This document shows positions 2,608 through 64,000 of a stretch of 64,000 bases of DNA, one piece after another. The stretch lies in NCBI RefSeq assembly GCF_006345805.1, contig NW_021833746.1, positions 7,766 through 71,765 on the forward strand, given 5' to 3'. Source of the DNA: Octopus sinensis. Taxonomy: Eukaryota. The position numbers and the translations under genes are program-made. The notes beneath the pieces are model-generated. The model did no database searches. It was given only the letters and a program-made list of their open reading frames with translations, and was not told the DNA's origin. The number at the start of each line of letters is the position of its first letter. Position 1 is the stretch's first letter.

Positions 2608-3855
2608 TTAACGTCTGCTTTCCATGCTAGCATGGGTTAGACGATTTGACTGAGGACTGGCAAACCAGATGGCTGCACCAGGCTCCAATCTTGATCTGGC
2701 AGAGTTTCTACAGCTGGATGCCCTTCCCAATGCCAACCACTCGGAGAGTGTAATGGGTGCTTTTACATGCCGTAGTATGGGTTGGACAATTTGACTGAGG
2801 ACTGGTGAACCAGATGGCTGCACCAGGCTCCAATCTTGATCTGGCAGAGTTTCTACAGCTGGATGCCCTTCCCAATGCCAACCACTCGGAGAGTGTAATG
2901 GGTGCTTTTACATGCCGTAGTATGGGTTGGACAATTTGACTGAGGACTGGTGAACCAGATGGCTGCACCAGGCTCCAATCTTGATCTGGCAGAGTTTCTA
3001 CAGCTGGATGCCCTTCCTAACGCCAACCACTCCGAGAGTATAGTGGGTGCTTTTACATGCCGTAGTATGGGTTGGACAATTTGACTGAGGACTGGTGAAC
3101 CAGATGGCTGCACCAGGCTCCAATCTTGATCTGGCAGAGTTTCTACAGCTGGATGCCCTTCCCAATGCCAACCACTCGGAGAGTGTAATGGGTGCTTTTA
3201 CATGCCGTAGTATGGGTTGGACAATTTGACTGAGGACTGGTGAACCAGATGGCTGCACCAGGCTCCAATCTTGATCTGGCAGAGTTTCTACAGCTGGATG
3301 CCCTTCCCAATGCCACCACTCGGAGAGTGTAATGGGTGCTTTTACATGCGTAGTATGGGTTGGACAATTGACTGAGGACTGGTGAACCAGATGGCTGCAC
3401 CAGGCTCCAATCTTGATCTGGCAGAGTTTCTACAGCTGGATGCCCTTCCCAATGCCAACCACTCGGAGAGTGTAATGGGTGCTTTTACATGCCGTAGTAT
3501 GGTTGGACAATTTGACTGAGGACGGTGAACCAGATGGCTGCACCAGGCTCCAATCTTGATCTGGCAGAGTTTCTACTACAGCTGGATGCCCTTCCTAACG
3601 CCAACCACTCCGAGAGTATAGTGGGTGCTTTTACATGCCGTAGTATGGTTGGACAATTTGACTGAGGACTGGTGAACCAGATGGCTGCACCAGGCTCCAA
3701 TCTTGATCTGGCAGAGTTTCTACAGCTGGATGCCCTTCCTAACGCCAACCACTCCGAGAGTATAGTGGGTGCTTTTACATGCCACCGGCATGAGGGCCAG
3801 TCAGGCGGTACTGGCAAAGGCCATGGTCAAATGGTTTTTACATGCCACCTGCACA
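2576..3855 (-). repeat. 145-bp tandem array (8 units) derived from an RTE LINE 3' UTR
   Basis: Units start at about 2632, 2777, 2922, 3067, 3212, 3356, 3498, 3644; the array begins at the (CAT)n tail; the unit matches the reverse complement of ~59375-59510. Confidence 0.9.
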
Positions 3856-8672: not shown

Positions 8673-8705
8673 GCAATAATTCTTTTCATTGACTTCTCTT
8701 TCCAG

Positions 8706-8780
8706 GATGTGGTGAAGAGTATCAAAGTGTTGCTGGTCATTTCATTGTCTGGTGTGAAAGTATGTAGTAGCAAAGGGGAG
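8706..8780 (+). CDS. SH2D5: SH2D5-like PTB adaptor, coding exon B (DVVKSIKVLLVISLSGVKVCSSKGE)
   Basis: Acceptor cttctcttttccag, donor GAG|gtaagt, 75 nt, phase 0/0. Colinear with the recalled SH2D5 segment [25 protein letters not shown]. Absent from the ORF track. Confidence 0.85.
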
Positions 8781-10371: not shown

Positions 10372-10544
10372 CTTTATATATATATATATATATATATATG
10401 ATATATAACGTTCACATACATATATCTATAACGCTATGCATAAAAAAATAACATAAAAATAATATATATATATAAAAAAAAATATTTATAAAAGTATGAA
10501 AATTTCTAAGCTCATCACTAAAGTTCGTCTGTTTGTCATTGCAG

Positions 10545-10691
10545 AGTGTATACATGGCTCATGCCTTAAAACGAATATCCTTTGCGACCTGTGACCCGGA
10601 TTATTGCCAGTTCTCTTTTCTTGCCAGAGAGCCAAAAGGACAGATCAATGTTCAGTTCTGTCATGCTTTTGTCACCCGCAACTCTCCAGAA
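10545..10691 (+). CDS. SH2D5: SH2D5-like PTB adaptor, coding exon C (SVYMAHALKRISFATCDPDYCQFSFLAREPKGQINVQFCHAFVTRNSPE)
   Basis: Acceptor gtttgtcattgcag, donor GAA|gtaagt, 147 nt, phase 0/0. Strong match to the recalled SH2D5 segment [29 protein letters not shown]...LFCHLFV. Confidence 0.9.
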
Positions 10692-10980
10692 GTAAGTATT
10701 GTTTCCGTCTTTGTGGGTGGGTCATTGTGCCAATGATAAAACACACATTGGTTCAATTTCACTTAATTTTTTTTTTATTAGTCAATTGGTTGGTACTCCG
10801 TTGGCTAGGATGACGTGCATTTCAGTTGATCCGGTCAATGGAACAGCCTGCTTGTGAAAATAACATGCAAGTGGGTGAGTACTCCATATGCACCCCACAG
10901 ACATACAAACCCTTATGTAGTTCACAGGGAGATTCGGCATGGCACAGAATGTGACAAGGCTGGCCCTTTGAAATACAGGT

Positions 10981-11399: not shown

Positions 11400-11911
11400 A
11401 ATTATATACATCAAAATAAGCAGCAAGAATGACTCCGGTGATTTGGTGCGATCGTTTCGTACTACATCATTTTATTAAATGTTGTATTACAACAGTTTTG
11501 GAATGCTGGGCACTCATCAGTCAGTTGTAGAGGTTTTCCATTAATACAAGAATTTTCATATCAAGTGGCAACATTGTAGAGAGGGTGGATACATGGACAG
11601 GGATGTGGATTTGAATTTTAGGAATATTTGGGGTGGTGGAGCCCATCAACTGACTGACTGAGATTCAGTTGTTCCAGACTACTGTAGGGTTCTGAGAGGG
11701 AAGAACAAATTTATGTCTATACTGGAAAAAAAATTTTCCAGCCTCCCATAAATATCATAAAATAATTTCTAAAAAATCAGTGAGAATTTCATATTCCACT
11801 CTCCCAAATATGGCTACCATAGTAGCTAGACTTAATAGTAAAAACATTAAGTTAGCCAGGAGTGGAATGAATAGTAACAACAATGATAGTAATAATAATT
11901 GTAAAAATAGC

Positions 11912-11949
<38 letters not shown>

Positions 11950-12610
11950 TAATAACATTGATGTAAATAGTGATAATAGCAATATCAATAATAGAGGTGG
12001 TATAGATAAAAGTATGGTAGGTGATAATAATGAAGATGAATTAATAATTAGTAACCCTAGTTTGCATAACAACGTAATTACTAATAGTGAAAATAATACT
12101 AATACTAACAATAATTTAAATAACAGTAATGGAAGTGAACTGTCCTTAAATAATTCCAGTACCGGACACTATCCCCCCAGTTGTAATTGTAGGATTAGAT
12201 CAAAATGTCCGTTATCTGGCCTTTGTTCTGTCCAAAACGTGATTTATAAATGCACGATAATAACTTCAAACAATAGCTTTCTTTCTTTATTTTGGTTCTT
12301 CGGTAGATTTTAAAAAACGTCTAAACAATCATTTTTCCTCTTTTAGACTCAAACATAAGGCAGGTTGCACAACATTATCTAGTAAAATTTGGGAACTAAA
12401 ATACAATAATATAGAATTCAACCTAAAGTGGGATATAGTTAGATGAGCGCAACCTTATAGAAATAATAGGGATGGTTGTCAACTTTGTTCTATGGAAACT
12501 TATGAAATTTTGAAATATCAGGGTAATACAAATCTGTTGAATAACCGTTTGGAGCTGGGAGTATCTTGTATACATCGTACGACCCGAACGTTTAAATACT
12601 TTAAATAATA
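11400..12610 (+). mobile_element. 5'-truncated Penelope-like element (GIY-YIG endonuclease pseudogene) with inverted upstream segment
   Basis: 11741-12606 reads ASHKYHKIISKKSVRISYSTLPNM...CNCRIRSKCPLSGLCSVQNVIYKC [frameshift] YFGSSVDFKKRLNNH...KIWELK...KW...*...CQLC...LLNNRLEL...C: PLE thumb/linker/GIY-YIG motifs. Confidence 0.85.
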
Positions 12611-22645: not shown

Positions 22646-22987
22646 GCTGAAGAACTTAACACTATCATCGGGAATGCTTTCAAGATGGCCTACGCACAGC
22701 AACGTCAACGGCAGCCAACATTCAATGAGCTGATCGAGCGCCAGATCCAGGAACAGAAGGCCAAGTTTGCTGAGGACCAGGAGCAGGCAGAGAGGGACCT
22801 CCAGCAGAAGCTCAACGAGATTGCCACTCCAACCCCGTTCTCAGAGAAGGCCATACAGAGGATGGAGATGAGACGACAACTGAGCGAAGAAACAGCGCAG
22901 GAGAGAGAGAAGGAACTTGCACAACAACATCACCAGCAGCAACAGCAGCAGCATTCAAGCACTGCCACACTGCGGAGCTGGCTTTGG
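22646..22987 (+). CDS. SH2D5: SH2D5-like adaptor, coding exon D (PTB C-terminal helix AEELNTIIGNAFKMAY, coiled coil, poly-Q)
   Basis: Acceptor ccctgtcgttgccag, donor TGG|gtaagt, 342 nt, phase 0/0. The IGxAFxxAY helix is a PTB hallmark. Confidence 0.9.
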
Positions 22988-23084
22988 GTAAGTACGGCCC
23001 TTGGCTCAGTGGACTTAATTTTGGCATGTGGGGGCTGGGGACTCAAAAGGTAAATGGCATAGATGAAGTTTATGATGTTAGTTT

Positions 23085-24590: not shown

Positions 24591-24614
24591 CCTCCTCCTC
24601 CTCCATTCCAACAG

Positions 24615-25013
24615 GGAAGGCAGACGACGGAACGTGTGAAACACCGGTCACCAGTTACGGAACTCCTATCGCTGACCTCTGACCGCGGCTCGCCGCCACC
24701 TGCCCTTATCAAGCCATCCTCTAGTCCCGCCCACCTGAGGCCACAGCCACACAACAGCACCGATCACAGCCTCCACGGCCAGCAGCGTAACTCTGTACCT
24801 CCTGGGGTGAGCAACTCCCACTCCTTGTCTGTTAGCGCTATCCAACAATGCTTTGAGAACTGTCAGGTGAAGGGGTCTCCCGTGACTGCTTTAAAAGATC
24901 AAATTGACAAACACTTCGGTGATTGCTCCCTTGAATCCTTAGATCTGGAATTTGGCCACCCTGACACATATCTATACCCTGCTTCTAAACTAAAGCAGAA
25001 AGATGGGGAAAAG
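24615..25013 (+). CDS. SH2D5: SH2D5-like adaptor, coding exon E (Ser/Pro-rich linker, GRQTTERVKH...KLKQKDGEK)
   Basis: Acceptor cctcctccattccaacag, donor AAG|gtacct (weaker), 399 nt open, GC-rich, phase 0/0 and compatible with exons D and F. Confidence 0.8.
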
Positions 25014-29880: not shown

Positions 29881-30523
29881 GGCATCGGCATCGTTGTTAA
29901 AATATTGTTTCTGTATCAAACTTCTGCTTCTTTCAAAGCAAATAAACTTACCCTCATAAATGTGATATTAAAGTTGTGGGGGGCATGGAGGGGAGACAAA
30001 AAAAAACCCCATGAAAATCCCAACAGAAATATTGTAAATGGTTTTGAAGTTGAAGAGGAAGATCCTAATTTTGGCCCAAGGCCAGCAATTTTGAGGAGAA
30101 TTGGGTGGGATAAGTTGATTACACTGTTCCCAATAGATGACTGGTACTTCATTTTATTAGTCCTGAATGGATGACCCCAGTGGTTTTTGAACATAATAAA
30201 CCTTTCTACAGTAGGAACAAGGCTTGAAATTTTGTGGGGAGATGAATCGATTATACCAAGGATGAAAGGCAAAGTTAACCTTAGTAGAATTTGAACTCAC
30301 CAAAATACCACCCCCCCCCGTCCCCAACTCTGCAGGTGTTGACATGCCCCAGTTGATGGCATCAATCTCAATTTTTTTAGGGGATCTGTGAATACCACTG
30401 TCCCTGCTCCTTCTAGAATCAGCTAGTAAAAAAAAAGAAAGAATGAGGGAAATTAAAAAAACCCTATAAAATCATATGACCCCTTTAAACACACAAGATA
30501 TGAAGGACATTACAAAACACACT

Positions 30524-30769
30524 CACTTCATCAGGAGATTTAAAAAGTAAAATTTTTGGACTGCAGTGTTTTATGACAAATCATGGAGTGTCAAATCCTG
30601 CTGGTCTGAAAGTAAAAGTTGTGATCTGTGCACAGCAGAGAAGAGTCCTTAAAACCCTAAACAAGGTTTCTGTGTAAATGCCAGATCAGAGATACTAAGG
30701 AAATGCAGACCGTTTGAAAAATACTTGTTATGCAATTGAAAGACTACCTTCAGTTGACTACAATCGCAT
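30524..30769 (+). mobile_element. Penelope GIY-YIG C-terminal fragment, copy 1
   Basis: Reads KSCDLCTAEK...KQGFCVNARSEILRKCRPFEKYLLCN*, the conserved PLE C-terminus; inverted copy at 34564-34811. Confidence 0.75.
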
Positions 30770-30840
30770 TTCATAAGACAAGGTTTCTCACTTACGTGTC
30801 TCATTACAATTTCTGGAAAAGATGTTGTGATTGGTTATTT

Positions 30841-34372: not shown

Positions 34373-34563
34373 ATACTTATATTTTGCTTACTCGTCTATA
34401 TGTTGCACTAGTTCATTCTCAGTTTTAACGTTAAAAAGTTGAGATGCAACGTAGCAAAGATATTTTGTACTGTGGTTCAACACTAAATAAGGTGTGTGAC
34501 TTATATACGCACCTGGTATATGTATTATATTTTGTCCGTTTATGCATACCCACTATATATTAC

Positions 34564-34811
34564 ATGCAATTGTAGCCAACTGAAGGTAGTGTCTTTCAAT
34601 TGCATAACAAGTATTTTTCAAACAGTCTGCATTTCCTTAATATCTCTGATCTGGCATTTACACAGAAACCTTGTTTAGGGTTTTAAGGACTCTTCTCTGC
34701 TGTGCACAGATCACAACTTTTACTTTCAGACCAGCAGGATTTGACACTCCATTATTTATCATAAAACACTGCAGTCCAAAAATTTTACTTTTTAAATCTC
34801 CAGATGAAGTG
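34564..34811 (-). mobile_element. Penelope GIY-YIG C-terminal fragment, copy 2
   Basis: Reverse complement of 30524-30769 with about 7 substitutions and one 2-nt indel. Confidence 0.75.
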
Positions 34812-35160
34812 TGTGTGTGTGTGTGTGTTTGAGTTTGTGAATGTTTGGGTTTGCTACTTTCAAATGTGTGTGTGTGTGTGAGTGTGTAATATATAATTAC
34901 GATTAAGTTGAATTAAGTACTTAATTGAGGTACCTTGATAGTTTGATATCGTATGTACAGGTGTCAATACATTGCGGCCGTTTCAAGTGGCTCCATTCAA
35001 TTAATCAATGAAGGCATTACATCATTTTGAAAGAAACCACTCTCTTCAGAAGCAGATGACCATATAGATTTCAATCACAAAGGAGAAACCATTTTTAGTA
35101 AATTTACATCAGTAATAGAGACCAAAATAATTACATTGTTTCCTTAGTTTTATGTATATA

Positions 35161-40881: not shown

Positions 40882-41290
40882 ATCCTCTTTTACTTGTTTC
40901 AGTCATTTGACTGCGGCCATGCTGGAGCACCGCCTTTAATCGAGCAACTCGACCCTGGGATTTATTCTTTTGTAAGCCCAGTACTTATTCTATCGGTCAC
41001 TTTTGCCGAACCGCTAAGTGACGGGGACGTAAACACACCAGCATCGGTTGTCAAGCAATGCTGGGGAGACAAACACAGACACACAAACATATACACATAC
41101 ATACATACATATATATATATACATATATACGATGGGCTTCTTTCAGTTTCCGTCTACCAAATCCACTCACAAGGCTTTGGTCGGCCCGAGGCTATAGTAG
41201 AAGACACTTGCCCAAGGTGCTACGCAGTGGGACTGAACCCAGAACCATGTGGTTGGTAAACAAGCTACTTACCACACAGCCACTCCTGCC
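40882..41290 (-). mobile_element. SINE-A full-length copy
   Basis: Reverse complement of the family consensus. Confidence 0.9.
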
Positions 41291-41942
41291 CCTATCATAG
41301 TTTTTTTTTAAATGCGGGCATGGCCGTGTGGTTAAGAAGCTTTCTTCCCAACCATGTGGTTTCAGGTTCAGTCTCACTGCACACATTTCAGGCTGGTGTC
41401 TTCTACTATAGTTCAGAGCCAACCAGTGTCTTGTGAATGAATTTGGTAGGCAGACAGAAACTGTGTGGAAAGTTATCATAGTCTATATTTGTTCCCACCC
41501 CCACTGCTGTGTTGGTTTGTTTGCATCCCTATAATCTATGGTTCAACAAAACAAGCTGATAGACGAGACTCAAAAAAAAAAATTTTTTTTAAACAAATAA
41601 ATATTGGGGTCAATTTGTTTGAGTAAACCCTTCATGGTGGTGCTCCAGCATGGCCCCAATCCAGTGACTGAAATAAATCAAAGATTATTATCAATGAATG
41701 CTTGTAGAAAGAGACAGAAACAAAATATTATGTTGCTTCTTTCTATATTCTGTTTCAATTCCTGTCTGGGTTGATTTTTTTTTTTTTTACCATTCATCAT
41801 GTTGTGATCATAAAATAAGTACCTGTAATATACTGGGGCATGACAAAATTTACTGTACACTCCCCCCACTCCACCCTGAAGTGTGTGGCCATGCGTCTAT
41901 GAGAAATCATTATTACCACTTCACAGACTGCTGGTTATTCTC

Positions 41943-42177
41943 TTTGAAGTGCTTTCATTTAATTTTCATCTGTTTTACATCTTTACATCTGTTGTGTGCA
42001 TTGTATATCTGTTGTGTGTTATACAAGTGGTTTATGCGGTGTATATATGTTGTGCACATTGTACGTATAATGTGCATGTTGCATTCCTACTATGTGTTTT
42101 TAGCATCTTTTATTATGTGGTTTACATCTGTTGTGTGTGTTTAACACCAGCTATCTGCATTCTACATCTGTTATGCT
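41943..42177 (+). repeat. Left arm (donor) of a 235-bp inverted duplication
   Basis: Reverse complement of 45703-45937 with 4 substitutions; part of a degenerate acatctgttgtgtg repeat region. Confidence 0.95.
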
Positions 42178-42296
42178 TGTTTTAATTCTACCCATTGTAT
42201 ACATTTTGCATCTGTTATGTGCATTCTACATCTGTTGTGTGTGTTTAGCATCTGTTTTTATACGTTTTACTTCTGCTCTGTGTGTGTACCATCTCT

Positions 42297-42891
42297 ATTA
42301 CTCTTTAACTCTTTTACTTGTTTCAGTCATTTGACTGTGGCCATGCTGGAGCACCGCCTTTAATCGAGCAACTCGACCCCGGGACTTATTCTTTGTAAGC
42401 CCAGTACTTATTCTATCGGTCTCTTTTGCCGAACCGCTAAGTGACAGGGACATAAACACACCAGCATCGGTTGTCAAGCAATGCTAGGGGGACAAACACA
42501 CACACACAAACTCACACACATACACATACATACCCTCTCTCTCTCTTTCGGAGAAGCACAAGCACCTACACGCACATATACACACACGGCAGTAACTTCC
42601 GCCTGCCAAATTCAATCACAAAGCTCCGGTCGGCTCGGGTCTATAGCAGAAGACATCTACCCAAAGTGCCACGCAGTGGGACTGAACCCGAAACCATGTA
42701 GCTAGGAAGCAAGCTCCCTAACAACACAAGACAGGCTTCTTTCAGTTTCCGTCTACCAAATCCACTCACAAGGCATTGGTCGGCCCGGGGCTATAGCAGA
42801 AGACACTTGCCCAAGATGCCACGCAGTGGGACTGAACCCGGAACCATGTGGTTGGTTAGCAAGCTACTTACCACACAGCCTCTCCTGCGCC
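42297..42891 (-). mobile_element. SINE-A with duplicated head/core
   Basis: Two successive head+core segments (~42730-42891 and ~42590-42725) precede one tail. Confidence 0.8.
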
Positions 42892-43244
42892 TGTGTATAT
42901 ACATATTTATAATATAAATCTGTTGCATCTATTATATTATATTATATATCAGTTTATATTATCACATATACTGTATATCCATTGTATATGTTGTACATTT
43001 GTTTATTGTTTACACCTATTGTATATTTATTCTGTGCATGCATTTTCCATGTTATTCATCTATTATGCATGTAGCACAACTGTTGTATATCTTTCTAATG
43101 CATTGCATAGTGTTTTGTCTGTATTATCTTATGCCTGTCCTTAAATCCATTGTACATCTGTTTGGTATAACATCTGTTGTGTGTAATACATTTGTAAAAT
43201 ACATGTGCTGTATTTTCTGGTATGCAAGTTGACATAGTATACAG

Positions 43245-43445
43245 CAGTGCTTTTCAAACTTTTTGCTGGAGCGGAACCCCAAGGAAACATTCCACTGGCT
43301 CGGGGAACCCCTGTGCAATAATTTAATAGTCTTACGCACACATATCTGCGCAGGAGAATTAAAAATTATTGCCGATTTTAGCAGTTTTGTAACTTCCTGC
43401 GGAACCCCTGGACTGTACTGGCGGAACCCTGGTTGAAAACCACTG
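43245..43445 (-). mobile_element. hAT-like MITE, intact
   Basis: TIRs cagtgcttttcaa / ttgaaaaccactg; exact 8-bp TSD gtatacag at 43237-43244 and 43446-43453. Confidence 0.9.
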
Positions 43446-43774
43446 GTATACAGTGTAAACATGTAGTGTAAACATGTAGCATAAACATTCAAACATTGTC
43501 ACTATCTTTCCAACTCCTGCTGCATTTCACATGGAGCTTTTGGCCCTTCAAAGTTGTCTTGGTGTGTTAGACAACCTTCTTTTATTTTTGGGTTTTAGGT
43601 TTTTTTGGTCTGAAAAATAAGACTTGCACATGTTGGAAAAGAGTTGGTTTATTGAGTAAATAAATGTGTCACTGTCACATACATTGTACATCTGTTGGTT
43701 ATATAGCACTTGATAGCCAAAGTCAGGACTTGAAATTCTTATCCCTTGGGTAGAAACTTCATATACTCTCTCTC

Positions 43775-44173
43775 TCTCTCTTTTACTCTTTTACTTGTTT
43801 CAGTCATTTGACTGTGGCCATGCTGGAGCACCGCCTTTAGTCGAGCAACTCAACCCCGGGACTTATTCTTTGTAAGCCCAGTACTTATTCTATCGGTCTC
43901 TTTTGCCGAACCGCTAAGTAACAGGAACGTAAACACACCAGCATCGGTTGTCAAGCAATGCTAGGGGGACAAACACACACACAAAAACTCACATACATAC
44001 ACATATATACGACAGGCTTCTTTCAGTTTCCGTCTACCAAATCCACTCACAAGGCATTGGTCGGCCCGGGGCTATAGCAGAAGACACTTGCCCAAGATGC
44101 CACGCAGTGGGACTGAACCCGGAACCATGTGGTTGGTTAGCAAGCTACTTACCACACAGCCACTCCTGCGCCT
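43775..44173 (-). mobile_element. SINE-A full-length copy
   Basis: Reverse complement of the family consensus; ~440 bp upstream of exon F. Confidence 0.9.
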
Positions 44174-44616
44174 ATATATTTTACTTGCTTCTCAAATCTG
44201 GAAAAAAAAACAACAACAACAATGCAGAAATCATGCCATAGTGCAATTTATCTGGCTGTTGTTGTTTAGCCCCAGGTCAGTCTTAGTCTTGATTTGATGA
44301 GATTATGCTCAGAGGCATTCCAGCCATGGCTGTCTCGTTTTATTTCTGCCGACATAAGGTATGATTTGAGTCTAATGACGGAAACAGTTTAAAGAATATG
44401 AGTATATTGTTGTTTTTAGTCATTGACTGGCTAATAGGAATTAAAGGGGTCCATAGGTAAAAGAAATAAGAATTAAAGGGGTCCATAGGCAGAAAAAAAA
44501 TATGGCTGAGAACCACAGAAGCAATAGGCTAAAAAGGTAAAAAATACAAATTTTCATTAAATTTAATGTTTTTGTTGCTGTTTTACTGAAATAAATTTTC
44601 TTCTCTTTTCCTGCAG

Positions 44617-45299
44617 CCCAAACTGTCCAGCATCCAAAACAGACCCCTTCCAGCCCTACCAATTGATAGAAATGGACATAGTAAATCTAGTATACAGCGA
44701 TCGTCGCTGCAGAATTTATCGTCGACGGACGATGGTGATCGCACGTCTTCAAGTTGTCACGTTCCTCTCAGAGAGTCAGTCCATCCGTATAACCCACGGC
44801 GGAGGGAGAGCTCTCCGAAGACTAAGGGTCAGAGGCCGCTGAGCGGAGCAGCATTTGATATAAAAAAAAGCTACAACGGTTACAGCCGGGCATTGTCATG
44901 CGATGCCTCGTACTACGGATACAGATCCAGCGTCCACTGCCCCCAGGCGTCGCCTCTAGTGAAGCAACAAAGCTTCCCAGAGACAGAAAGCACATCTCTG
45001 CAGCAGTTATATACGTTAGAAGGACATGGCAAACACATTGAGGAACCCTGCTTGCCTGCTAGTTGTCCAAACAACAGCAGCAGCAGCATCACTGACCACC
45101 AACATTGGCGACCGACACTTGACATTGGGAGGCACTTGTCGCCAATGGCACGTCATTCAAGAAAGGAGCCGCATGCACCTCAGCTCCCTATTTCCCAACC
45201 TGGACCAACATCATCTCCACAGTCGTCAAGGTACCAAAATGATAGTCTCTTTCAATACCAGGGTTATTATGATAGTTCCATACCGAATTCACCGTCAAG
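44617..45299 (+). CDS. SH2D5: SH2D5-like adaptor, coding exon F (PKLSSIQNRPLPALP...YYDSSIPNSPS)
   Basis: Acceptor ttttcttctcttttcctgcag, donor AG|gtaagt, 683 nt open, phase 0 in / phase 2 out, GC-rich. Assignment to the same gene rests on strand and phase only. Confidence 0.75.
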
Positions 45300-45324
45300 G
45301 TAAGTCCCAGCTTATTTCGTTCAC

Positions 45325-46025
45325 CTTTCAGTATTTAAACTGGTCATATCCAGCCCAAATATTTTCTACCTGTTTTATGTTCAAACTGGCCAGATCCAGC
45401 CTCTCACACCTACTCCACAATGTTGTCTTACAAACAATCACATTGTCGAAATATTTGGTCCCTCACACACCTACTCTACAAAATCAATATTAAAAAATAA
45501 ACAATCACATCATCAAATTCTCAAAGCTACAAGATGATCCAAGATTAATTCAAAACAACGTGAATAAATAAGTTCCACATTTGAGAGAGTAAACTGAATG
45601 ACAAAGGGTTACACTGGCCATATCGAACCCAGATATTGTACCTGTTATATGTCCAGCCTTTCACATCTATCCTACAATGTCATTCTAAAAATAAACAATC
45701 ACAGCATAACAGATGTAGAATGCAGATAGCTGGTGTTAAACACACACAACAGATGTAAACCACATAATAAAAGGTGCTAAAAACACATAGTAGGAATGCA
45801 ACATGCACATTATACGTACAATGTGCACAACATATATACACCACATAAACCACGTGTATAACACACAACAGATATACAATGCACACAACAGATGTAAAGA
45901 TGTAAAACAGATGAGAATTAAATGAAAGCACTTCAAAAGCTATGAGATAATGCATGATTAATTCAAAACAATGTGAATAAATAAGCATTGCATTTGACAA
46001 AATAATCTGGATGCCAAAGAGTTAA
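45325..46025 (+). mobile_element. Tandem piggyBac-like MITE copies, the second carrying the 235-bp inverted insert
   Basis: Family motifs ttttatgttcaaactggccagatc and aagcta...gataatgcatgattaattcaaaacaatg; ends aaagggttac (~45610) and aaagagttaa (~46025). Confidence 0.7.
45703..45937 (-). repeat. Right arm (inserted copy) of the 235-bp inverted duplication
   Basis: See 41943-42177. Confidence 0.95.
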
Positions 46026-46104
46026 TTTAGTTAATTTAGCCATTAGTTAATTTAGCCAAAGAGTTAATTTAGCCATTATTTCCTTTTGGTTTTGTCATTA
46101 AATT

Positions 46105-46810
46105 AATAAGATTGGCTGAGAGACCTTGCTGTTCTCCATGTAGCAGTGGGATAACAGCTGGGGTGACAGGATAGCAGTTGATGTAGTTGTAGATTGATTG
46201 CTAGGTTGGCAGTTGGAAAGCAGTTGATGTAGCTAGAGGAAGGCTGCTGGGATGGCAGAAAGAACACAGTTGATGTACATTGGCAGCAGGATAGCTGTTG
46301 GTGTTGCAGTGGAATGGCAGTAGGATAGCAGTTGGTATAGTAGTTGGAGTGGCAGTAGAATAGCAGTTGGTGTTGCAGTGGATTGGCAGTAGGATAGCAG
46401 TTGGTGTTGTAGTGGGATGGCAGTTGGATTGGCAGTAGGATAGCAGTTGGTGTTGCAGTGGAATGACAGCTGGAGTGGCAGTAGGATACCACTTGGTGTT
46501 GCAGTTGGATGGCAGTTGGTGTGGCAGTAGGATAGCAGTTAGTGTGGCAGTGGGATGGTAGTTAAAATGGCAGTAGGATAGCAGTTGGTGTTGCAGTAAA
46601 ATGGCAGTTGAATGGGCAGTAGGATAGCAGTTGGTGTAGGAATTGGAGTGGCAGTTGGTGTTGCAGTAGAATGGCAGTAGCATAGCAGTTGGAGTGGCAG
46701 CAGGCAAATAGTTGATAAAGCAGGAGGAGGTAGTTGTTATAGCAGTGGGATGGTAGCTGGATTGGCAGTAGGAAAACAGTTGCTGCTGCAGTAAGGTAGC
46801 AGCTGGGGTG
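46105..46810. repeat. Degenerate minisatellite (ggcagtaggatagcagttggtgttgcagtg units)
   Basis: The motif recurs more than 12 times with variable spacing. Confidence 0.8.
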
Positions 46811-47059
46811 ACAGTAGGATGGCAGCTGGAATGGTATGTTGTGCTTTCTTTTGACATTCAAACTAACTTTGGTGACATCATTTATTTCTCAAGAATTCCC
46901 ACCCTTAAAACAGCACAACACCCTACTAAAAAAAAAAAAACTGACCCTACCGCCATCACCACCACCGCTGCATTCTACAGAAACCCCTTTCTGTACTACA
47001 TCCCGAGCTGTTTCATCAATGATGTTCAAAGTACAGTACCGGAACTGACACTTCCGCCT

Positions 47060-47480
47060 TCTGTAGTGGTAGTAGCAGTTGTGGTGGTGGTGGTGGTGGT
47101 GGTAGTTGCAGTGGTGTTGGTGGTGGTGTTGGTGTTGGTAGTGGTTGTTTTTAATGGTGGTGTGGTGGTGGTGGTTGGTGGTCATGAGGTTGGTAGTGGT
47201 AGTGTTGTGGTGGTGGTGGTGGTGGTGGTGGTGGTAGTTGCAGTGGTGTTGGTGGTGGTGTTGGTGTTGGTAGTGGTTGTTTTTAATGGTGGTGGTGGTG
47301 GGTGTGTTGGTGGTCATGAGGTTGGTAGTGGTAGTGGTTGTGGTGGTGGTGGTGGTGGTGGTGGTGGTAGTTGCAGTGGTGTTGGTGGTGGTGTTGGTGT
47401 TGGTAGTGGTTGTTTTTAATGGTGGTGGTGGTGGGTGTGTTGGTGGTCATGAGGTTGGTAGTGGTAGTAGTTGTTGTGGT
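47060..47480. repeat. GGT-rich minisatellite, three ~132-bp units
   Basis: ggtagttgcagtggtgttgg...tttttaatgg...ggtcatgagg at about 47101, 47233 and 47366. Confidence 0.85.
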
Positions 47481-47722
47481 GCTGTTGCCAGTTCTGACGA
47501 TAGCGATAGTGGTGTTGGTTATGGTTGTGGTGTTGGTGGTAGTGGTGGTTGTCAATGGTCTTTTGTGGTGTCGGTGCAGCTGGTAGTTGCTGGGGGTAAA
47601 AAAAAATGGTAGGGGGGGTAGATCATCCTTAATGCAGAGCAGGTTGTGGTGGTGGAGGTGGGGGTGACAGTGGAATATATAATTTTTAGGTCAGACCCTA
47701 ACTTGGAATACATTTGGATGCA

Positions 47723-47758
<36 letters not shown>

Positions 47759-48084
47759 CGTGTGCCTGTGTGCGTATGTAAGTATGGATGTGTGTGTATA
47801 TATATATATATATATGTATATTGGTTACTTCATTTCACAGTTATGTGAGCATACATACATTTATTTATCCCTCTATACATGCCTACATATATGCATACAC
47901 GCACACATACACACACACATATACACACACATATTACTGGGTGAACACACACACACTCAAAATGGCTGTGTTTAAGAATTTCGTTTTGCAACCCCTGTGG
48001 CTTTACATTCAGTCCCACTGCAAAACATTTTGGTAGTGCCTCAACATGGCCACAGTTTAATAAATGATAGTCCAAAAGAAAGTT

Positions 48085-48494
48085 AAGGCGCAGGAATGGC
48101 TGTGTGGTAAGTAGCTTGCTAACCAACCACATGGTTCTGGGTTCAGTCCCACTGCGTGGCATCTTGGGCAAGTGTCTTCTGCTATAGCCCCGGGCCGACC
48201 AATGCCTTGTGAGTGGATTGGTAGACGGAAACTGAAAGAAGCCTGTCGTATATATGTATACATATATATATGTATGAGTGTGTATGTAGTGTGGTCTGTG
48301 TTTGTCCCCCTAGCATTGCTGACAACCGATGCTGGTGTGTTTACGTCCCGTCACTTAGCGGTTCGGCAAAAGAGACCGATAGAATAAGTACTGGGCTTAC
48401 AAAGAATAAGTCCCGGGATCAATTTGCTCGACTAAAGGCGGTGCTCCAGCATAGCCGCAGTCAAATGACTGAAACAAGTAAAAGAGTAAAAGAG
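48085..48494 (+). mobile_element. SINE-A full-length copy
   Basis: Family consensus. Confidence 0.9.
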
Positions 48495-48802
48495 TGTGTG
48501 TGTGTGTGTGTGTGTGAAGCACATATCATCATTTAGAATCTGTCTTTCTTGCTGGATTGGGGACCAAAGCCTTGTGAGTGGAGCCTAAATGATAAAGCTC
48601 TATGACCTATTGTTTGTGATTCCCAGATTGGCCAGAGGTACTCTAGATCTTCTGAACTATTTGCCTATACAATAAAGCATTGTCGCCTGTTGCTTGTGGT
48701 TAGTGGTACTGCAGGTCTTCTGAAGCCTTTCCCTATAATATAATGCACCGTTTCCTATAGCCTATGGTTCATACTATGGTTAGATATTCTATAGGTGTTC
48801 TA

Positions 48803-57999: not shown

Positions 58000-59532
58000 A
58001 ACTGGAGGAGAAGTTCCAGGTGTGGAAGGAGGGTTTAGAATCGAGGGGCCTTAGAGTCAACCTAGCTAAAACCAAAGTACTAATAAGTAGAAAGGTAGGC
58101 AATCCACAAATGTCCTCAGGAAGATGGCCCTGCTCGATCTGTAGAAAAGGTGTAGGTAGAAACTCTATAACATGTACCCAGTGTAAGCTATGGACACATA
58201 AGAGGTGCAGCAATGTCAAAGGTAGGCTAACTGGGAAGATAGTTTTATATGTGGCAGATGCTCGGGAGCATTGACCTCCGAAAATCTGCAGAAAACAACT
58301 TCCGTCACTTTCCAGGGGGAAAAATTAGAAGTAGTTGATAGCTTCCGTTATCTAGGTGACCAAGTCAGTAGTGGGGGTGGGTGCGCTGAGAGTGTAACTG
58401 CTAGAATAAGAATAGCCTGGGCAAAGTTTAGGGAGCTCTTACCTCTGCTGGTGACTAAAGGCCTCTCGCTCAGAGTAAAGGGCAGACTGTATGATGCATG
58501 TGTTCGAACTGCCATGCTACATGGCAGTGAAACATGGGCCGTGACTGCTGAGGACATGCGTAAGCTCATGAGGAATGAAGCCAGTATGCTCCGATGGATG
58601 TGTAATGTCAGTGTACTTACTCAACAGAGCGTTAGTTCCCTGAGAGAAATGTTGTACCTAAGAAGCATCAGTTGTTGCGTGCAAGAGAGACGATTGCGCT
58701 AGTATGGTCATGTGGCGAGAATGGATGAAGATAGGTGTGTGAGAAAGTGCCAATCCCTAGCAGTTGAGGGAACCCGTGGAAGAGGTAGACCCAGGAAAAC
58801 CTGGGACGAGGTGGTGAAGCACGACCTTCGAACGTTAGGTCTCACCATGGAAATGACTAGAGACCGAGACCTATGGAAGTATGCTGTGCGTGAGAAGACC
58901 CGGCAAGACTAGTGAAGCCATAACCCGTGGCCCCTACCTGGGACGTAGTCAGTCCACCTGTGCATACCTTCCTGCTTGTGACACTTGTGAAGACCTGTTG
59001 AGGCAAATCAAATCAAAGTCAAATCGAATCAAGTCAGACCAAATCAAAATAGATGAACATCAATGGAATTTGTATCCTTGTGGTACCAGTGCCGGTGGCA
59101 CATAAGAAAACCATCCGAACGGGACTGTAGCCAGTACCGCATCGACTGGCCTCCGTGCCGTGGGCACGTAACAAACACCATCCGATCGTAGCCGTTCGCC
59201 AGCCTCGTCTGGCACCTGTGTCGGTAGCACATAAGAAAAACACCGAAAACACCATATCCGAGCGTGGCTGTCTGCCAGCCTCATCTGGCACCTGTGTCGG
59301 TGGCACATAAAAAACACCATCCGAGTGTGGCCGTCTGCCAGCCTTGTCTGGCACCTGTGTCGGTGGCACATAAAATCACCCACTACACTCTCGGAGTGGT
59401 TGGCGTTAGGAAGGGCATCCAGCTGTAGAAACACTGCCAGATCTGACTGGCCTGGTGTAGCCTTCGGGCTTGCCAGACCCCAGTTGAACCGTCCAACCCA
59501 TGCTAGCATGGAAAGCGGACGTTAAACGATGA

Positions 59533-63705: not shown

Positions 63706-64000
63706 GCGGCTGTGTGGTAAGTAGCTTGTTTACCAACCACATGTTTCCGGATTCAGTCCCACTGCGTGGCACCTTGGGCAAGTGTCTTCTACTATAGCCT
63801 CGGGCCGACCAAAGCCTTGTGAGGGGGTTTGGTAGACGGAAACTGAAAGAAGCCCGTCGTATATATTTATATGGATATATTATGTGTGTTTTGTGTTCCT
63901 TATCTTGACCCCTGCATCGCTTGACAGCTGATGTTGGTGTGTTTGCGTCCCTATAACCTAGCAGTTCAGCAAAACGAGCGATAGAAAAAGTACTAGGCTT
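63706..64000 (+). mobile_element. SINE-A copy running off the window end
   Basis: Head and core match the family. Confidence 0.8.

What the first reader, a model, noticed from the sequence alone, without database searches (positions are those of the whole stretch)
41943..45937. Recent 235-bp inverted templated copy brackets the 683-nt coding exon F
Seen: 45703-45937 is the reverse complement of 41943-42177 with only 4 substitutions. The right copy sits inside a piggyBac-like MITE, replacing a ~10-20-nt stretch (aaacaatcac|insert|agctatgagataatgc), with short microhomologies at both junctions and no TSD. The donor is local degenerate minisatellite, not a recognised TE. The arms lie 2.4 kb upstream and 0.4 kb downstream of exon F. 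Known: templated insertions from nearby DNA arise by microhomology-mediated repair; flanking intronic inverted repeats drive back-splicing and exon skipping; long dsRNA is an ADAR substrate and coleoids edit heavily. Inference: one repair event created a ~98% duplex that could circularise or skip exon F (683 nt, phase 0/2, so skipping shifts frame) or be hyper-edited.
Basis: partly seen in the sequence, partly recalled or inferred. Interest (0 to 1): 0.7.

Follow-up and report, generated by a model that had tools for sequence, protein, structure and literature searches.

The report
Inverted repair-copied insert flanking an octopus exon
A 235-base stretch of intron in an Octopus sinensis signalling-adaptor gene was copied backwards into a decayed transposon in the next intron, probably during DNA break repair; it makes an inverted repeat around one coding exon, but that exon already has over a hundred such repeats around it and nothing shows an effect.

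Summary
45703-45937 is the reverse complement of 41943-42177: 235 nt, 4 substitutions, no gaps. These are the only two copies in the 2.72-Gb genome, which is Octopus sinensis, unplaced contig C10217.

The structural reading also holds. The left copy sits in its native setting, 21 nt of unique flank plus part of a degenerate ~20-nt periodic array. The right copy interrupts a 5'-truncated piggyBac-type MITE. There it replaces 13-16 nt that 11 paralogous copies and the adjacent copy keep. It has no target-site duplication, no terminal repeats and no poly-A. Junction microhomology is only 1 and 2 nt, which does not identify a pathway.

Exon F (44617-45299, 683 nt, phase 0/2) is a real exon of a PID+SH2 adaptor gene (LOC115230407, 'SH2D5'-like). 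Both arms lie in its long flanking introns.

The functional inference is untested and weakened:
- 118 other inverted pairs of at least 100 nt already bracket exon F.
- One SINE pair (412 nt, -746 kcal/mol against -405) wins in a nested fold.
- Exon F has consensus splice sites and is present in every annotated isoform and transcript found.
- Octopus circRNAs are reported as scarce.

Verdict: an ordinary, probably neutral, templated insertion. Editing of its double-stranded RNA by ADAR is the most plausible molecular consequence.

The parts
41943..42177 (+). Left arm, the donor copy of the 235-mer. It comprises 21 nt of unique flank plus about 214 nt of a degenerate ~20-nt periodic array, in intron E-F, 2440 nt upstream of exon F.
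   Evidence: (I1, D10)
41963..42262 (.). Degenerate ~20-nt periodic array (CATCTGTTGTGTG-type units). It continues 85 nt beyond the end of the copied segment, which marks the left copy as the native one.
   Evidence: (D10, D12)
45703..45937 (-). Right arm, the inverted templated copy of 41943-42177. It has 4 substitutions and lies 404 nt downstream of the exon F 5' splice site.
45319..45611 (+). piggyBac-type MITE copy 1, which carries an internal ~55-nt duplication. It holds the paralogous empty site AAACAATCAC-ATCATCAAATTCTCAA-AGCTACAAG at about 45499-45533.
45612..45702 (+). MITE copy 2 (5'-truncated), the part left of the insert, ending ...AAACAATCAC.
45938..46025 (+). MITE copy 2, the part right of the insert: AGCTATGAG...CCAAAGAGTTAA. 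It is 92-94% identical to many genomic copies (at least 1848 first-look candidates). It ends in the terminal inverted repeat plus TTAA.
44617..45299 (+). Exon F of the PID+SH2 adaptor gene LOC115230407. It is 683 nt, phase 0 in and 2 out, single copy in the genome, with consensus splice sites.
24614..25013 (+). Exon E, the upstream neighbour, with an alternative 5' splice site at 24806. It defines intron E-F as 19.6-19.8 kb.
43778..44173 (+). SINE copy 444 nt upstream of exon F. It is the upstream arm of the strongest competing exon-bracketing inverted pair.
48086..48494 (-). SINE copy 2787 nt downstream of exon F, the partner of 43778-44173 (412 nt aligned, 91.5%).

Best explanation
This is a single germline structural mutation in the Octopus sinensis lineage.

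Shown: a break occurred inside an already immobile, 5'-truncated piggyBac-type MITE in the intron just downstream of exon F. It was sealed with a 235-nt stretch copied, in inverted orientation, from unique or weakly periodic intronic DNA 3.5 kb upstream in the same gene. About 13-16 nt of the MITE were lost. The junctions share only 1 and 2 nt with the target.

Inferred: the copying step was either a replication or repair template switch to the opposite strand (MMBIR/FoSTeS-like or synthesis-dependent end joining), or capture of a locally synthesised fragment by end joining.

Consequence at RNA level: the product is a unique 98.3% inverted repeat whose arms sit in the two long introns flanking exon F. 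In the pre-mRNA it can form a 233-bp duplex. It is most likely selectively neutral. The most probable molecular consequence is that ADAR edits the duplex, not that exon F splicing changes. Exon F was already surrounded by many stronger or comparable SINE inverted pairs and behaves as a constitutive exon.
For: Identity and uniqueness:
- 235 nt, 4 substitutions, no gaps.
- Only two genomic copies.

Direction, left to right:
- The left copy continues into the same ~20-nt periodic array for 85 nt beyond the arm.
- The right copy interrupts a MITE.
- All 11 aligned paralogues and the adjacent copy carry ATCAT(T/C)(G/A)AA(A/T)TCTCAA at that exact site.

Not a mobile element:
- No target-site duplication, no terminal inverted repeat, no poly-A.
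- The junctions are unique.
- 1-nt and 2-nt microhomology, 13-16 nt lost.

Host is piggyBac-type:
- TTAA on both sides, terminal repeat CCCTTTAGCATT.../...AATGCTAAAGGG, about 230 bp, at least 1848 candidates.

Gene and exon:
- Octopus sinensis XP_029656464.2 lies on this 71,765-bp contig.
- The orthologue CAI9741590.1 is named 'SH2 domain-containing 5', with a PID domain.
- Exon F is conserved in octopod and more distant cephalopod transcripts.

Duplex potential:
- dG is -405 kcal/mol with 232 intermolecular base pairs.
- 233 of 235 bases pair in a 4.1-kb fold.

Neutrality and weak splicing effect:
- 118 cross-exon inverted pairs of at least 100 nt exist.
- The SINE pair has dG -746 and takes over in the 6.6-kb fold, where the 235 arms pair at 0 bases.
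- All annotated isoforms contain exon F.
- Octopus editing is concentrated in intronic hairpins, and circRNAs are low (PMC9699675).
- An inverted nearby template is the published signature of MMBIR-type templated insertions (PMC8421209).
Against: - No reads or orthologous introns could be examined. Neither the reality of the junctions in raw data nor the timing (O. sinensis-specific or shared with O. vulgaris) is shown.
- At 235 nt with the template 3.5 kb away, the event is larger and more distant than typical polymerase-theta or MMB-TI inserts, which are tens of nt from templates within about 100 bp. The microhomologies are too short to prove any template-switch pathway.
- The arms have no competing partner anywhere in the genome. 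The right arm is transcribed 2.4 kb before the SINE partner at 48086. Co-transcriptionally the 235-nt duplex could therefore form first and matter more than the equilibrium fold suggests.
Confidence: 0.72

Rival explanations
1. The new inverted repeat brings the exon F splice sites together in the pre-mRNA. It measurably drives back-splicing into a 683-nt circRNA, or skipping of exon F, which shifts the frame before the SH2 domain.
For: - The arms lie in both flanking introns and give the tightest cross-exon pair, a 3994-nt span.
- They have no competing partner in the genome.
- They pair at 233 of 235 bases when folded without distal SINEs.
- The right arm emerges 2.4 kb before the rival SINE partner.
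- Exon F is long (683 nt) with canonical splice sites. From memory of the circRNA literature, that is typical of single-exon circRNAs.
Against: - 118 other inverted pairs of at least 100 nt already bracket exon F, and 25 have higher alignment scores.
- The SINE pair 43778-44173/48086-48494 is stronger and crosses the 235-nt helix, leaving it unpaired in a nested MFE.
- The acceptor has a long polypyrimidine tract and the donor is AAG|gtaagt.
- No annotated isoform or assembled transcript lacks exon F.
- circRNAs are reported as expressed at low levels in octopus, and ADAR is reported to repress their biogenesis (PMC9699675).
Confidence: 0.1
2. Assembly artefact: the 235-nt inverted insert does not exist in the animal and was produced by chimeric long reads or by polishing.
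For: - C10217 is a 71.8-kb unplaced contig of a PacBio/Hi-C assembly with only 86% of sequence in chromosomes and 5.2% duplicated BUSCOs (PMC10700109).
- The gene is split between C10217 and C26.
- No independent sequence record of the junction-spanning ORF exists among 5.8 billion predicted proteins.
Against: - Missed-adapter chimeras give adjacent palindromes, not a clean 235-nt block placed 3.5 kb away.
- The block replaces exactly 13-16 nt inside another repeat.
- The two copies differ at 4 sites, which is not expected if one were a computational duplicate of the other.
- Exon F and the 235-mer have no second, haplotig copy.
Confidence: 0.06
3. The insertion is old and the arms only look young. 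Intrachromosomal gene conversion between the inverted copies keeps them at 98%.
For: - Inverted repeats a few kb apart are known substrates for gene conversion (general knowledge).
- The host MITE copy is 6-8% diverged from its nearest paralogues, so the site itself is old.
- A second local inverted pair at 95% identity lies in the same intron.
Against: - Nothing specific points to conversion.
- The identity boundaries are sharp and coincide with the MITE disruption.
- Four differences spread evenly along the arm fit simple divergence.
Confidence: 0.1
4. RNA-templated repair: the insert was reverse-transcribed from the gene's own intronic pre-mRNA or an antisense transcript and captured at the break.
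For: - Donor and target lie in the same transcription unit.
- Templated insertions from transcripts at breaks are described in the literature (from memory, not checked here).
Against: - There is no poly-A and no spliced structure.
- There is no cluster of A-to-G or T-to-C changes that an edited RNA template would leave. The differences are T>C, A>C, C>T, T>C.
- A DNA template 3.5 kb away is the simpler source.
Confidence: 0.05

Closest known systems
MMBIR/FoSTeS-type templated insertions (MMB-TI; PMC8421209)
   Same: An insert in inverted orientation copied from a nearby template on the same chromosome. It comes with a small loss at the target, no target-site duplication, and short junction microhomology.
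   Different: MMB-TIs as catalogued are about 10-100 nt with templates within about 100 bp. Here the insert is 235 nt and the template is 3.5 kb away, with only 1-2 nt of microhomology.
Polymerase-theta end joining / synthesis-dependent MMEJ with templated filler (PMC7165422, PMC2943611)
   Same: Break repair that combines a deletion with a templated insertion, direct or inverted, using very short primer-template identities.
   Different: The usual filler is a few to a few tens of nt copied from the immediate flanks. A 235-nt tract would need unusually processive synthesis, or a different polymerase.
Inverted Alu/SINE pairs that promote exon circularisation and serve as ADAR substrates in mammals
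   Same: Reverse-complementary sequences lie in the two introns flanking an exon, and intramolecular dsRNA of hundreds of bp is predicted.
   Different: The arms are not transposon copies but a unique two-copy sequence made by repair. No back-splice or editing data exist. The same exon also has ordinary SINE inverted pairs of the mammalian-Alu kind.
piggyBac-superfamily MITEs
   Same: The host of the right arm has TTAA target duplications, a terminal inverted repeat starting CCC..., a length of about 230 bp and thousands of copies.
   Different: The copy holding the insert is 5'-truncated and cannot move. The 235-mer has not spread with the family.

Membership tests
Templated insertion at a repaired break (not transposition) | The insert is identical or near-identical to another sequence in the genome that remains intact. 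| tested here: met
   231 of 235 nt identical to 41943-42177, and the donor is intact in its array.
Templated insertion at a repaired break (not transposition) | No transposon hallmarks: no target-site duplication, terminal repeats or poly-A, and no further copies. | tested here: met
   Junction analysis; only 2 copies in 2.72 Gb.
Templated insertion at a repaired break (not transposition) | The pre-insertion (empty) site can be shown, often with a small deletion. | tested here: met
   A paralogous empty site is present in 11 MITE copies and the adjacent copy, and 13-16 nt were replaced. The orthologous empty site could not be fetched because the O. vulgaris gene range was too long.
Microhomology-mediated pathway (MMBIR / TMEJ) specifically | Junction microhomology beyond what chance gives. 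| tested here: inconclusive
   1 nt (A) and 2 nt (AA). This fits MMBIR/TMEJ but also classical end joining.
Inverted-repeat-driven circRNA exon | Reverse-complementary sequences in both flanking introns and canonical splice sites on the exon. | tested here: met
   The arms lie in introns E-F and F-G, and the sites read cag|...|gtaagt. This is not specific to the 235-mer, because 118 pairs qualify.
Inverted-repeat-driven circRNA exon | Back-splice junction reads joining 45299 to 44617. | not testable with these tools
   No read-level RNA data were available. No assembled transcript or annotated isoform shows anything but linear inclusion.
ADAR hyper-editing substrate | Long, near-perfect intramolecular dsRNA. 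| tested here: met
   In silico only: 232-233 bp duplex, dG -405 kcal/mol, imperfections 2 G:U, 1 A:G, 1 C:A. It is outcompeted in the nested 6.6-kb fold.
ADAR hyper-editing substrate | Clusters of A-to-G mismatches in RNA relative to DNA. | not testable with these tools
   No RNA-seq reads could be reached.
piggyBac-type MITE (host element) | TTAA target-site duplication, a short terminal inverted repeat beginning CCC, small size without coding capacity, and high copy number. | tested here: met
   Alignment of 11 copies gives TTAA|CCCTTTAGCATT...AATGCTAAAGGG|TTAA over about 230 bp. There are at least 1848 and at least 2090 first-look candidates.

The most novel reading that the evidence does not exclude
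A repair-generated, non-transposon inverted repeat arose after or near the O. sinensis/O. vulgaris split. It acts as a lineage-specific RNA element in one of two ways. Either it forms first during transcription and drives back-splicing or skipping of a frame-shifting exon upstream of the SH2 domain, or it serves as an ADAR-recruiting 'editing inducer' for the neighbouring coding exon. That would be a natural with/without comparison between two sister octopus species.
Probability: 0.07. Interest if true: 0.55.

Novelty: new member of a known kind. Interest (0 to 1): 0.27.

Why it matters
If confirmed in reads, this is a clean germline example in a cephalopod of an unusually long (235 nt), kilobase-range, inverted templated insertion. 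Donor, target and lost target bases can all be reconstructed. That is useful for cataloguing break-repair signatures outside model organisms.

It also shows that exon-bracketing double-stranded RNA can arise without transposition. Its biological weight is small as it stands. The exon already sits among many SINE inverted pairs, and no RNA phenotype is known.

The only route to wider interest is a comparison between O. sinensis and O. vulgaris, if the insert is present in one species only.

Tried and rejected
1. Fetching the orthologous O. vulgaris locus through its protein. No DNA was returned because the gene spans 149 kb.
2. Looking for independent sequence records of the insert junctions through the 113-aa ORF that spans the right arm. 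There was no hit among 5.8 billion proteins.
3. Using Logan contigs of relatives. The genomic contig L015 ends about 40 nt into the intron, where the MITE begins, so it does not reach the insertion site. L016 is a spliced transcript.
4. A Pfam PID search of the genome to place the exons. It found nothing on this contig because the domain is split over small exons. The exons were placed with tblastn and blastn instead.
5. Rfam on 41000-47000. The only match was a sub-threshold miRNA hit outside the arms, so the arms are no known RNA family.
6. Mobile-element capture (MITE plus insert transposing). Rejected because only one MITE copy carries the 235-mer and that copy is 5'-truncated.
7. The reverse direction, right copy as donor. 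Rejected on the array continuation and the MITE empty sites.
8. An apparent 8-of-9 similarity between the donor flank AAACAAGCA and the target AAACAATCA. It is 3 nt out of register with the junction, so it is not counted as microhomology (by eye, checked).
Full report
**Observation**

The repeat finder reports arms 41943-42177 and 45703-45937, 235 nt, 98% complementary, 3525 nt apart (I1). A pairwise alignment shows four substitutions and no gap. Similarity ends abruptly at both borders. BLAST gives 98.3% identity and E = 1e-114.

The genome holds the window at C10217:7766-71765 and totals 2.72 Gb in 13,516 contigs. The 235-mer occurs only at these two places. A relaxed search with 591 nt of donor context adds nothing over the arm.

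**Where this is**

A search of 1.84 billion representative proteins with the exon F translation found one true hit, a 656-aa Octopus vulgaris protein. It is named 'SH2 domain-containing 5', CAI9741590.1.

Its 90%-identity neighbours include O. bimaculoides LOC106883979 isoforms X1-X5. They also include XP_029656464.2 of Octopus sinensis, whose contig is 71,765 bp, the length of C10217. The assembly statistics match the published O. sinensis assembly: 13,516 scaffolds and 2719.2 Mb (PMC10700109).

The protein has a PID/PTB domain. A full-length Logan transcript of a related octopus (P0072, 839 aa) adds an SH2 domain after exon F.

Mapping P0001 and the transcript L016 places the exons on the + strand:

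| Exon | Window coordinates |
|---|---|
| A | 1172-1255 |
| B | 8705-8780 |
| C | 10543-10692 |
| D | 22646-22992 |
| E | 24614-24806 (short form) or 24614-25013 (long form) |
| F | 44617-45299 |

The SH2 exons are not in the window. They lie on C26:19,243,194-19,247,815. Intron E-F is therefore 19.6-19.8 kb, and intron F-G is longer than 18.7 kb and broken by the assembly. Both arms are intronic.

Exon F details:
- It reads cag|CCC...TCAAG|gtaagt and is 683 nt, 227 codons plus 2 nt.
- It is single copy in the genome.
- It is conserved, at lower identity, in more distant cephalopod transcripts (P0004-P0006).

**Which copy is the original**

The left copy consists of 21 nt of unique sequence followed by a degenerate array with ~20-nt periodicity. 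The array continues for about 85 nt past the arm's end at 42177 (D10 and D12).

The right copy interrupts a repeat. The 88 nt to its right (45938-46025) match many genomic places at 92-94%, with 1848 first-look candidates.

I oriented and aligned eleven of these copies. They form a ~230-bp element bounded by TTAA, with terminal inverted repeats CCCTTTAGCATT... and ...AATGCTAAAGGG.

The window has two adjacent copies:
- Copy 1 is at about 45319-45611 and starts only ~20 nt after the exon F donor site.
- Copy 2 is 5'-truncated, at 45612-46025.

All eleven paralogues and copy 1 read AAACAATCAC-ATCAT(T/C)(G/A)AA(A/T)TCTCAA-AGCTATGAG at the insertion site. Copy 2 reads AAACAATCAC-[235 nt]-AGCTATGAG.

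The insert therefore replaced 13-16 nt. There is no target-site duplication, no terminal repeat and no poly-A. In-register junction microhomology is 1 nt (A) at one end and 2 nt (AA) at the other.

Microhomologies this short are close to chance and cannot by themselves assign the event to a microhomology-mediated pathway.

**How it probably arose (inferred)**

The event has four features: an inverted copy of a template a few kb away on the same chromosome, a small loss at the target, minimal microhomology, and an intact donor. This is the published signature of template-switch repair, the MMBIR-type templated insertions (PMC8421209). It also fits synthesis-dependent end joining (PMC2943611, PMC7165422, listed).

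The insert is longer and its template more distant than the typical catalogued cases. Capture by end joining of a fragment synthesised locally would give the same product.

An RNA intermediate is not excluded but has no support. The four differences (T>C, A>C, C>T, T>C) do not form an editing-like cluster.

**Age**

Four differences in 235 nt is 1.7%, with a Poisson range of roughly 0.5-4%. The event is younger than the host MITE copy, which is 6-8% from its nearest paralogues. It is younger than most local SINE pairs, which are about 8-20% apart.

O. sinensis and O. vulgaris are said to have split about 2.5 Mya, and O. bimaculoides about 34 Mya (PMC10700109). Without a calibrated neutral rate or the orthologous DNA, I cannot say on which side of the sinensis/vulgaris split the event falls. 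Gene conversion between the arms could also make it look younger than it is.

**What it could do in RNA**

The two arms alone give a predicted duplex of -405 kcal/mol with 232 intermolecular pairs. In RNA terms the four imperfections are two G:U wobbles, one A:G and one C:A. Folding 41900-45980 pairs 233 of 235 arm bases.

The pair is far from alone:
- 118 inverted pairs of at least 100 nt have one arm in intron E-F and the other downstream of exon F.
- Twenty-five of them have higher alignment scores than the 235-mer pair.
- The SINE pair 43778-44173 / 48086-48494 is the strongest nearby rival. It is 412 nt at 91.5%, lies 444 nt upstream and 2787 nt downstream of the exon, and gives -746 kcal/mol.

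The SINE helix and the 235-nt helix cross each other. In a nested minimum-energy fold of 41900-48520, the SINE pair forms 377 bp and the 235-nt arms pair at 0 bases.

- The 235-nt arms have no other partner anywhere in the genome.
- They have the smallest span (3994 nt), and the right arm is transcribed 2.4 kb before the SINE partner. Kinetically it could form first.

Four points count against a splicing effect:
- Exon F has a long polypyrimidine tract and a consensus AAG|gtaagt donor.
- Every annotated isoform in three octopus species contains it, as does every assembled transcript found.
- It has evidently tolerated flanking SINE inverted repeats for much longer than the insert has existed.
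- In O. vulgaris, circRNAs were found at overall low levels. Most A-to-I editing lay in introns and 3'UTRs, where hairpins are frequent (PMC9699675).

The best-supported expectation is that the duplex, when it forms, is edited by ADAR, and that exon F splicing is little affected. None of this could be measured with the tools available.

**Artefact?**

C10217 is a small unplaced contig of an assembly with known fragmentation. I found no independent record of the junctions.

Several things make an assembly artefact unlikely, about 6% by my estimate:
- The architecture is a clean block replacing 13-16 nt inside another repeat.
- The block lies 3.5 kb from its source.
- The block differs from the source at four sites.

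Only raw reads can settle it.

**Comparison and verdict**

Structurally this is a new example of a known kind of mutation, a templated inverted insertion at a repaired break. It landed in a piggyBac-type MITE.

Functionally it resembles the inverted Alu/SINE pairs that flank circularised exons and feed ADAR in mammals. Membership in 'IR-driven circRNA exon' or 'hyper-edited dsRNA' rests on RNA evidence that is not available.

The finding is accurate and carefully described, but ordinary. Interest is low to moderate. It could rise only if a with/without comparison between O. sinensis and O. vulgaris showed an RNA difference.

Noticed in passing
window 30517-30775 and 34558-34818: A second sharply bounded local inverted pair lies in the same intron E-F: about 260 nt, 95% identical, 3.8 kb apart. 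At high identity it is two-copy, with only 74-82% partial matches elsewhere in the genome. One flank of the second copy is a (CA)n run. It may be another local templated copy or two members of an old low-copy transposon. It does not bracket an exon.
   Followed up: partly
G000 C26:19243194-19247815 (+) versus window end at 64000: The gene is split by the assembly. The PID domain through exon F lies on unplaced contig C10217, while the three SH2-domain exons lie on chromosome-scale scaffold C26. The O. sinensis RefSeq protein XP_029656464.2 therefore ends 'SR*' by reading from exon F into the intron.
   Followed up: partly
window 45319-45611 and 45496, 45563, 45690, 45766, 45976: MITE copy 1 begins only ~20 nt after the exon F 5' splice site. 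The MITE copies and the insert carry five AATAAA motifs on the sense strand within 700 nt of the exon. O. bimaculoides isoforms show several alternative short 3' ends right after exon F. Intronic polyadenylation here may be worth a look.
   Followed up: no
window 46013-46080: Immediately at the 3' end of MITE copy 2 there is a small tandem duplication of the MITE terminus plus TTAA plus flank (GCCAAAGAGTTAATTTAGCC... repeated). This is another footprint of untidy repair at the same element.
   Followed up: no
window 24806 / 25013: Exon E has two alternative 5' splice sites 207 nt apart, both in phase 0. The O. vulgaris model uses the short form. The O. sinensis and O. bimaculoides models and the Logan transcripts use the long form.
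   Followed up: partly
window 46150-46850 and 47040-47560: Two long tandem arrays lie downstream of the right arm: a 23-nt period array (TGGCAGTAGGATAGCAGTTGGTG-like) and a GGT-rich array with a 133-nt higher-order period. Both are intronic and give long spurious ORFs on both strands.
   Followed up: no
window 2619-3783: A tandem array of ~145-nt units is 95-96% identical between units. It lies in the intron after exon A and produces repeated ORFs on the minus strand.
   Followed up: no
window 11696-12313 (+) and 58226-58702 (+): Two ORFs look like transposon remnants. One has a Cys-rich CNCRIRSKCPLSGLC...VIYKC motif. The other has a reverse-transcriptase-tail-like sequence. Neither matched Pfam at E <= 0.01.
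   Followed up: partly
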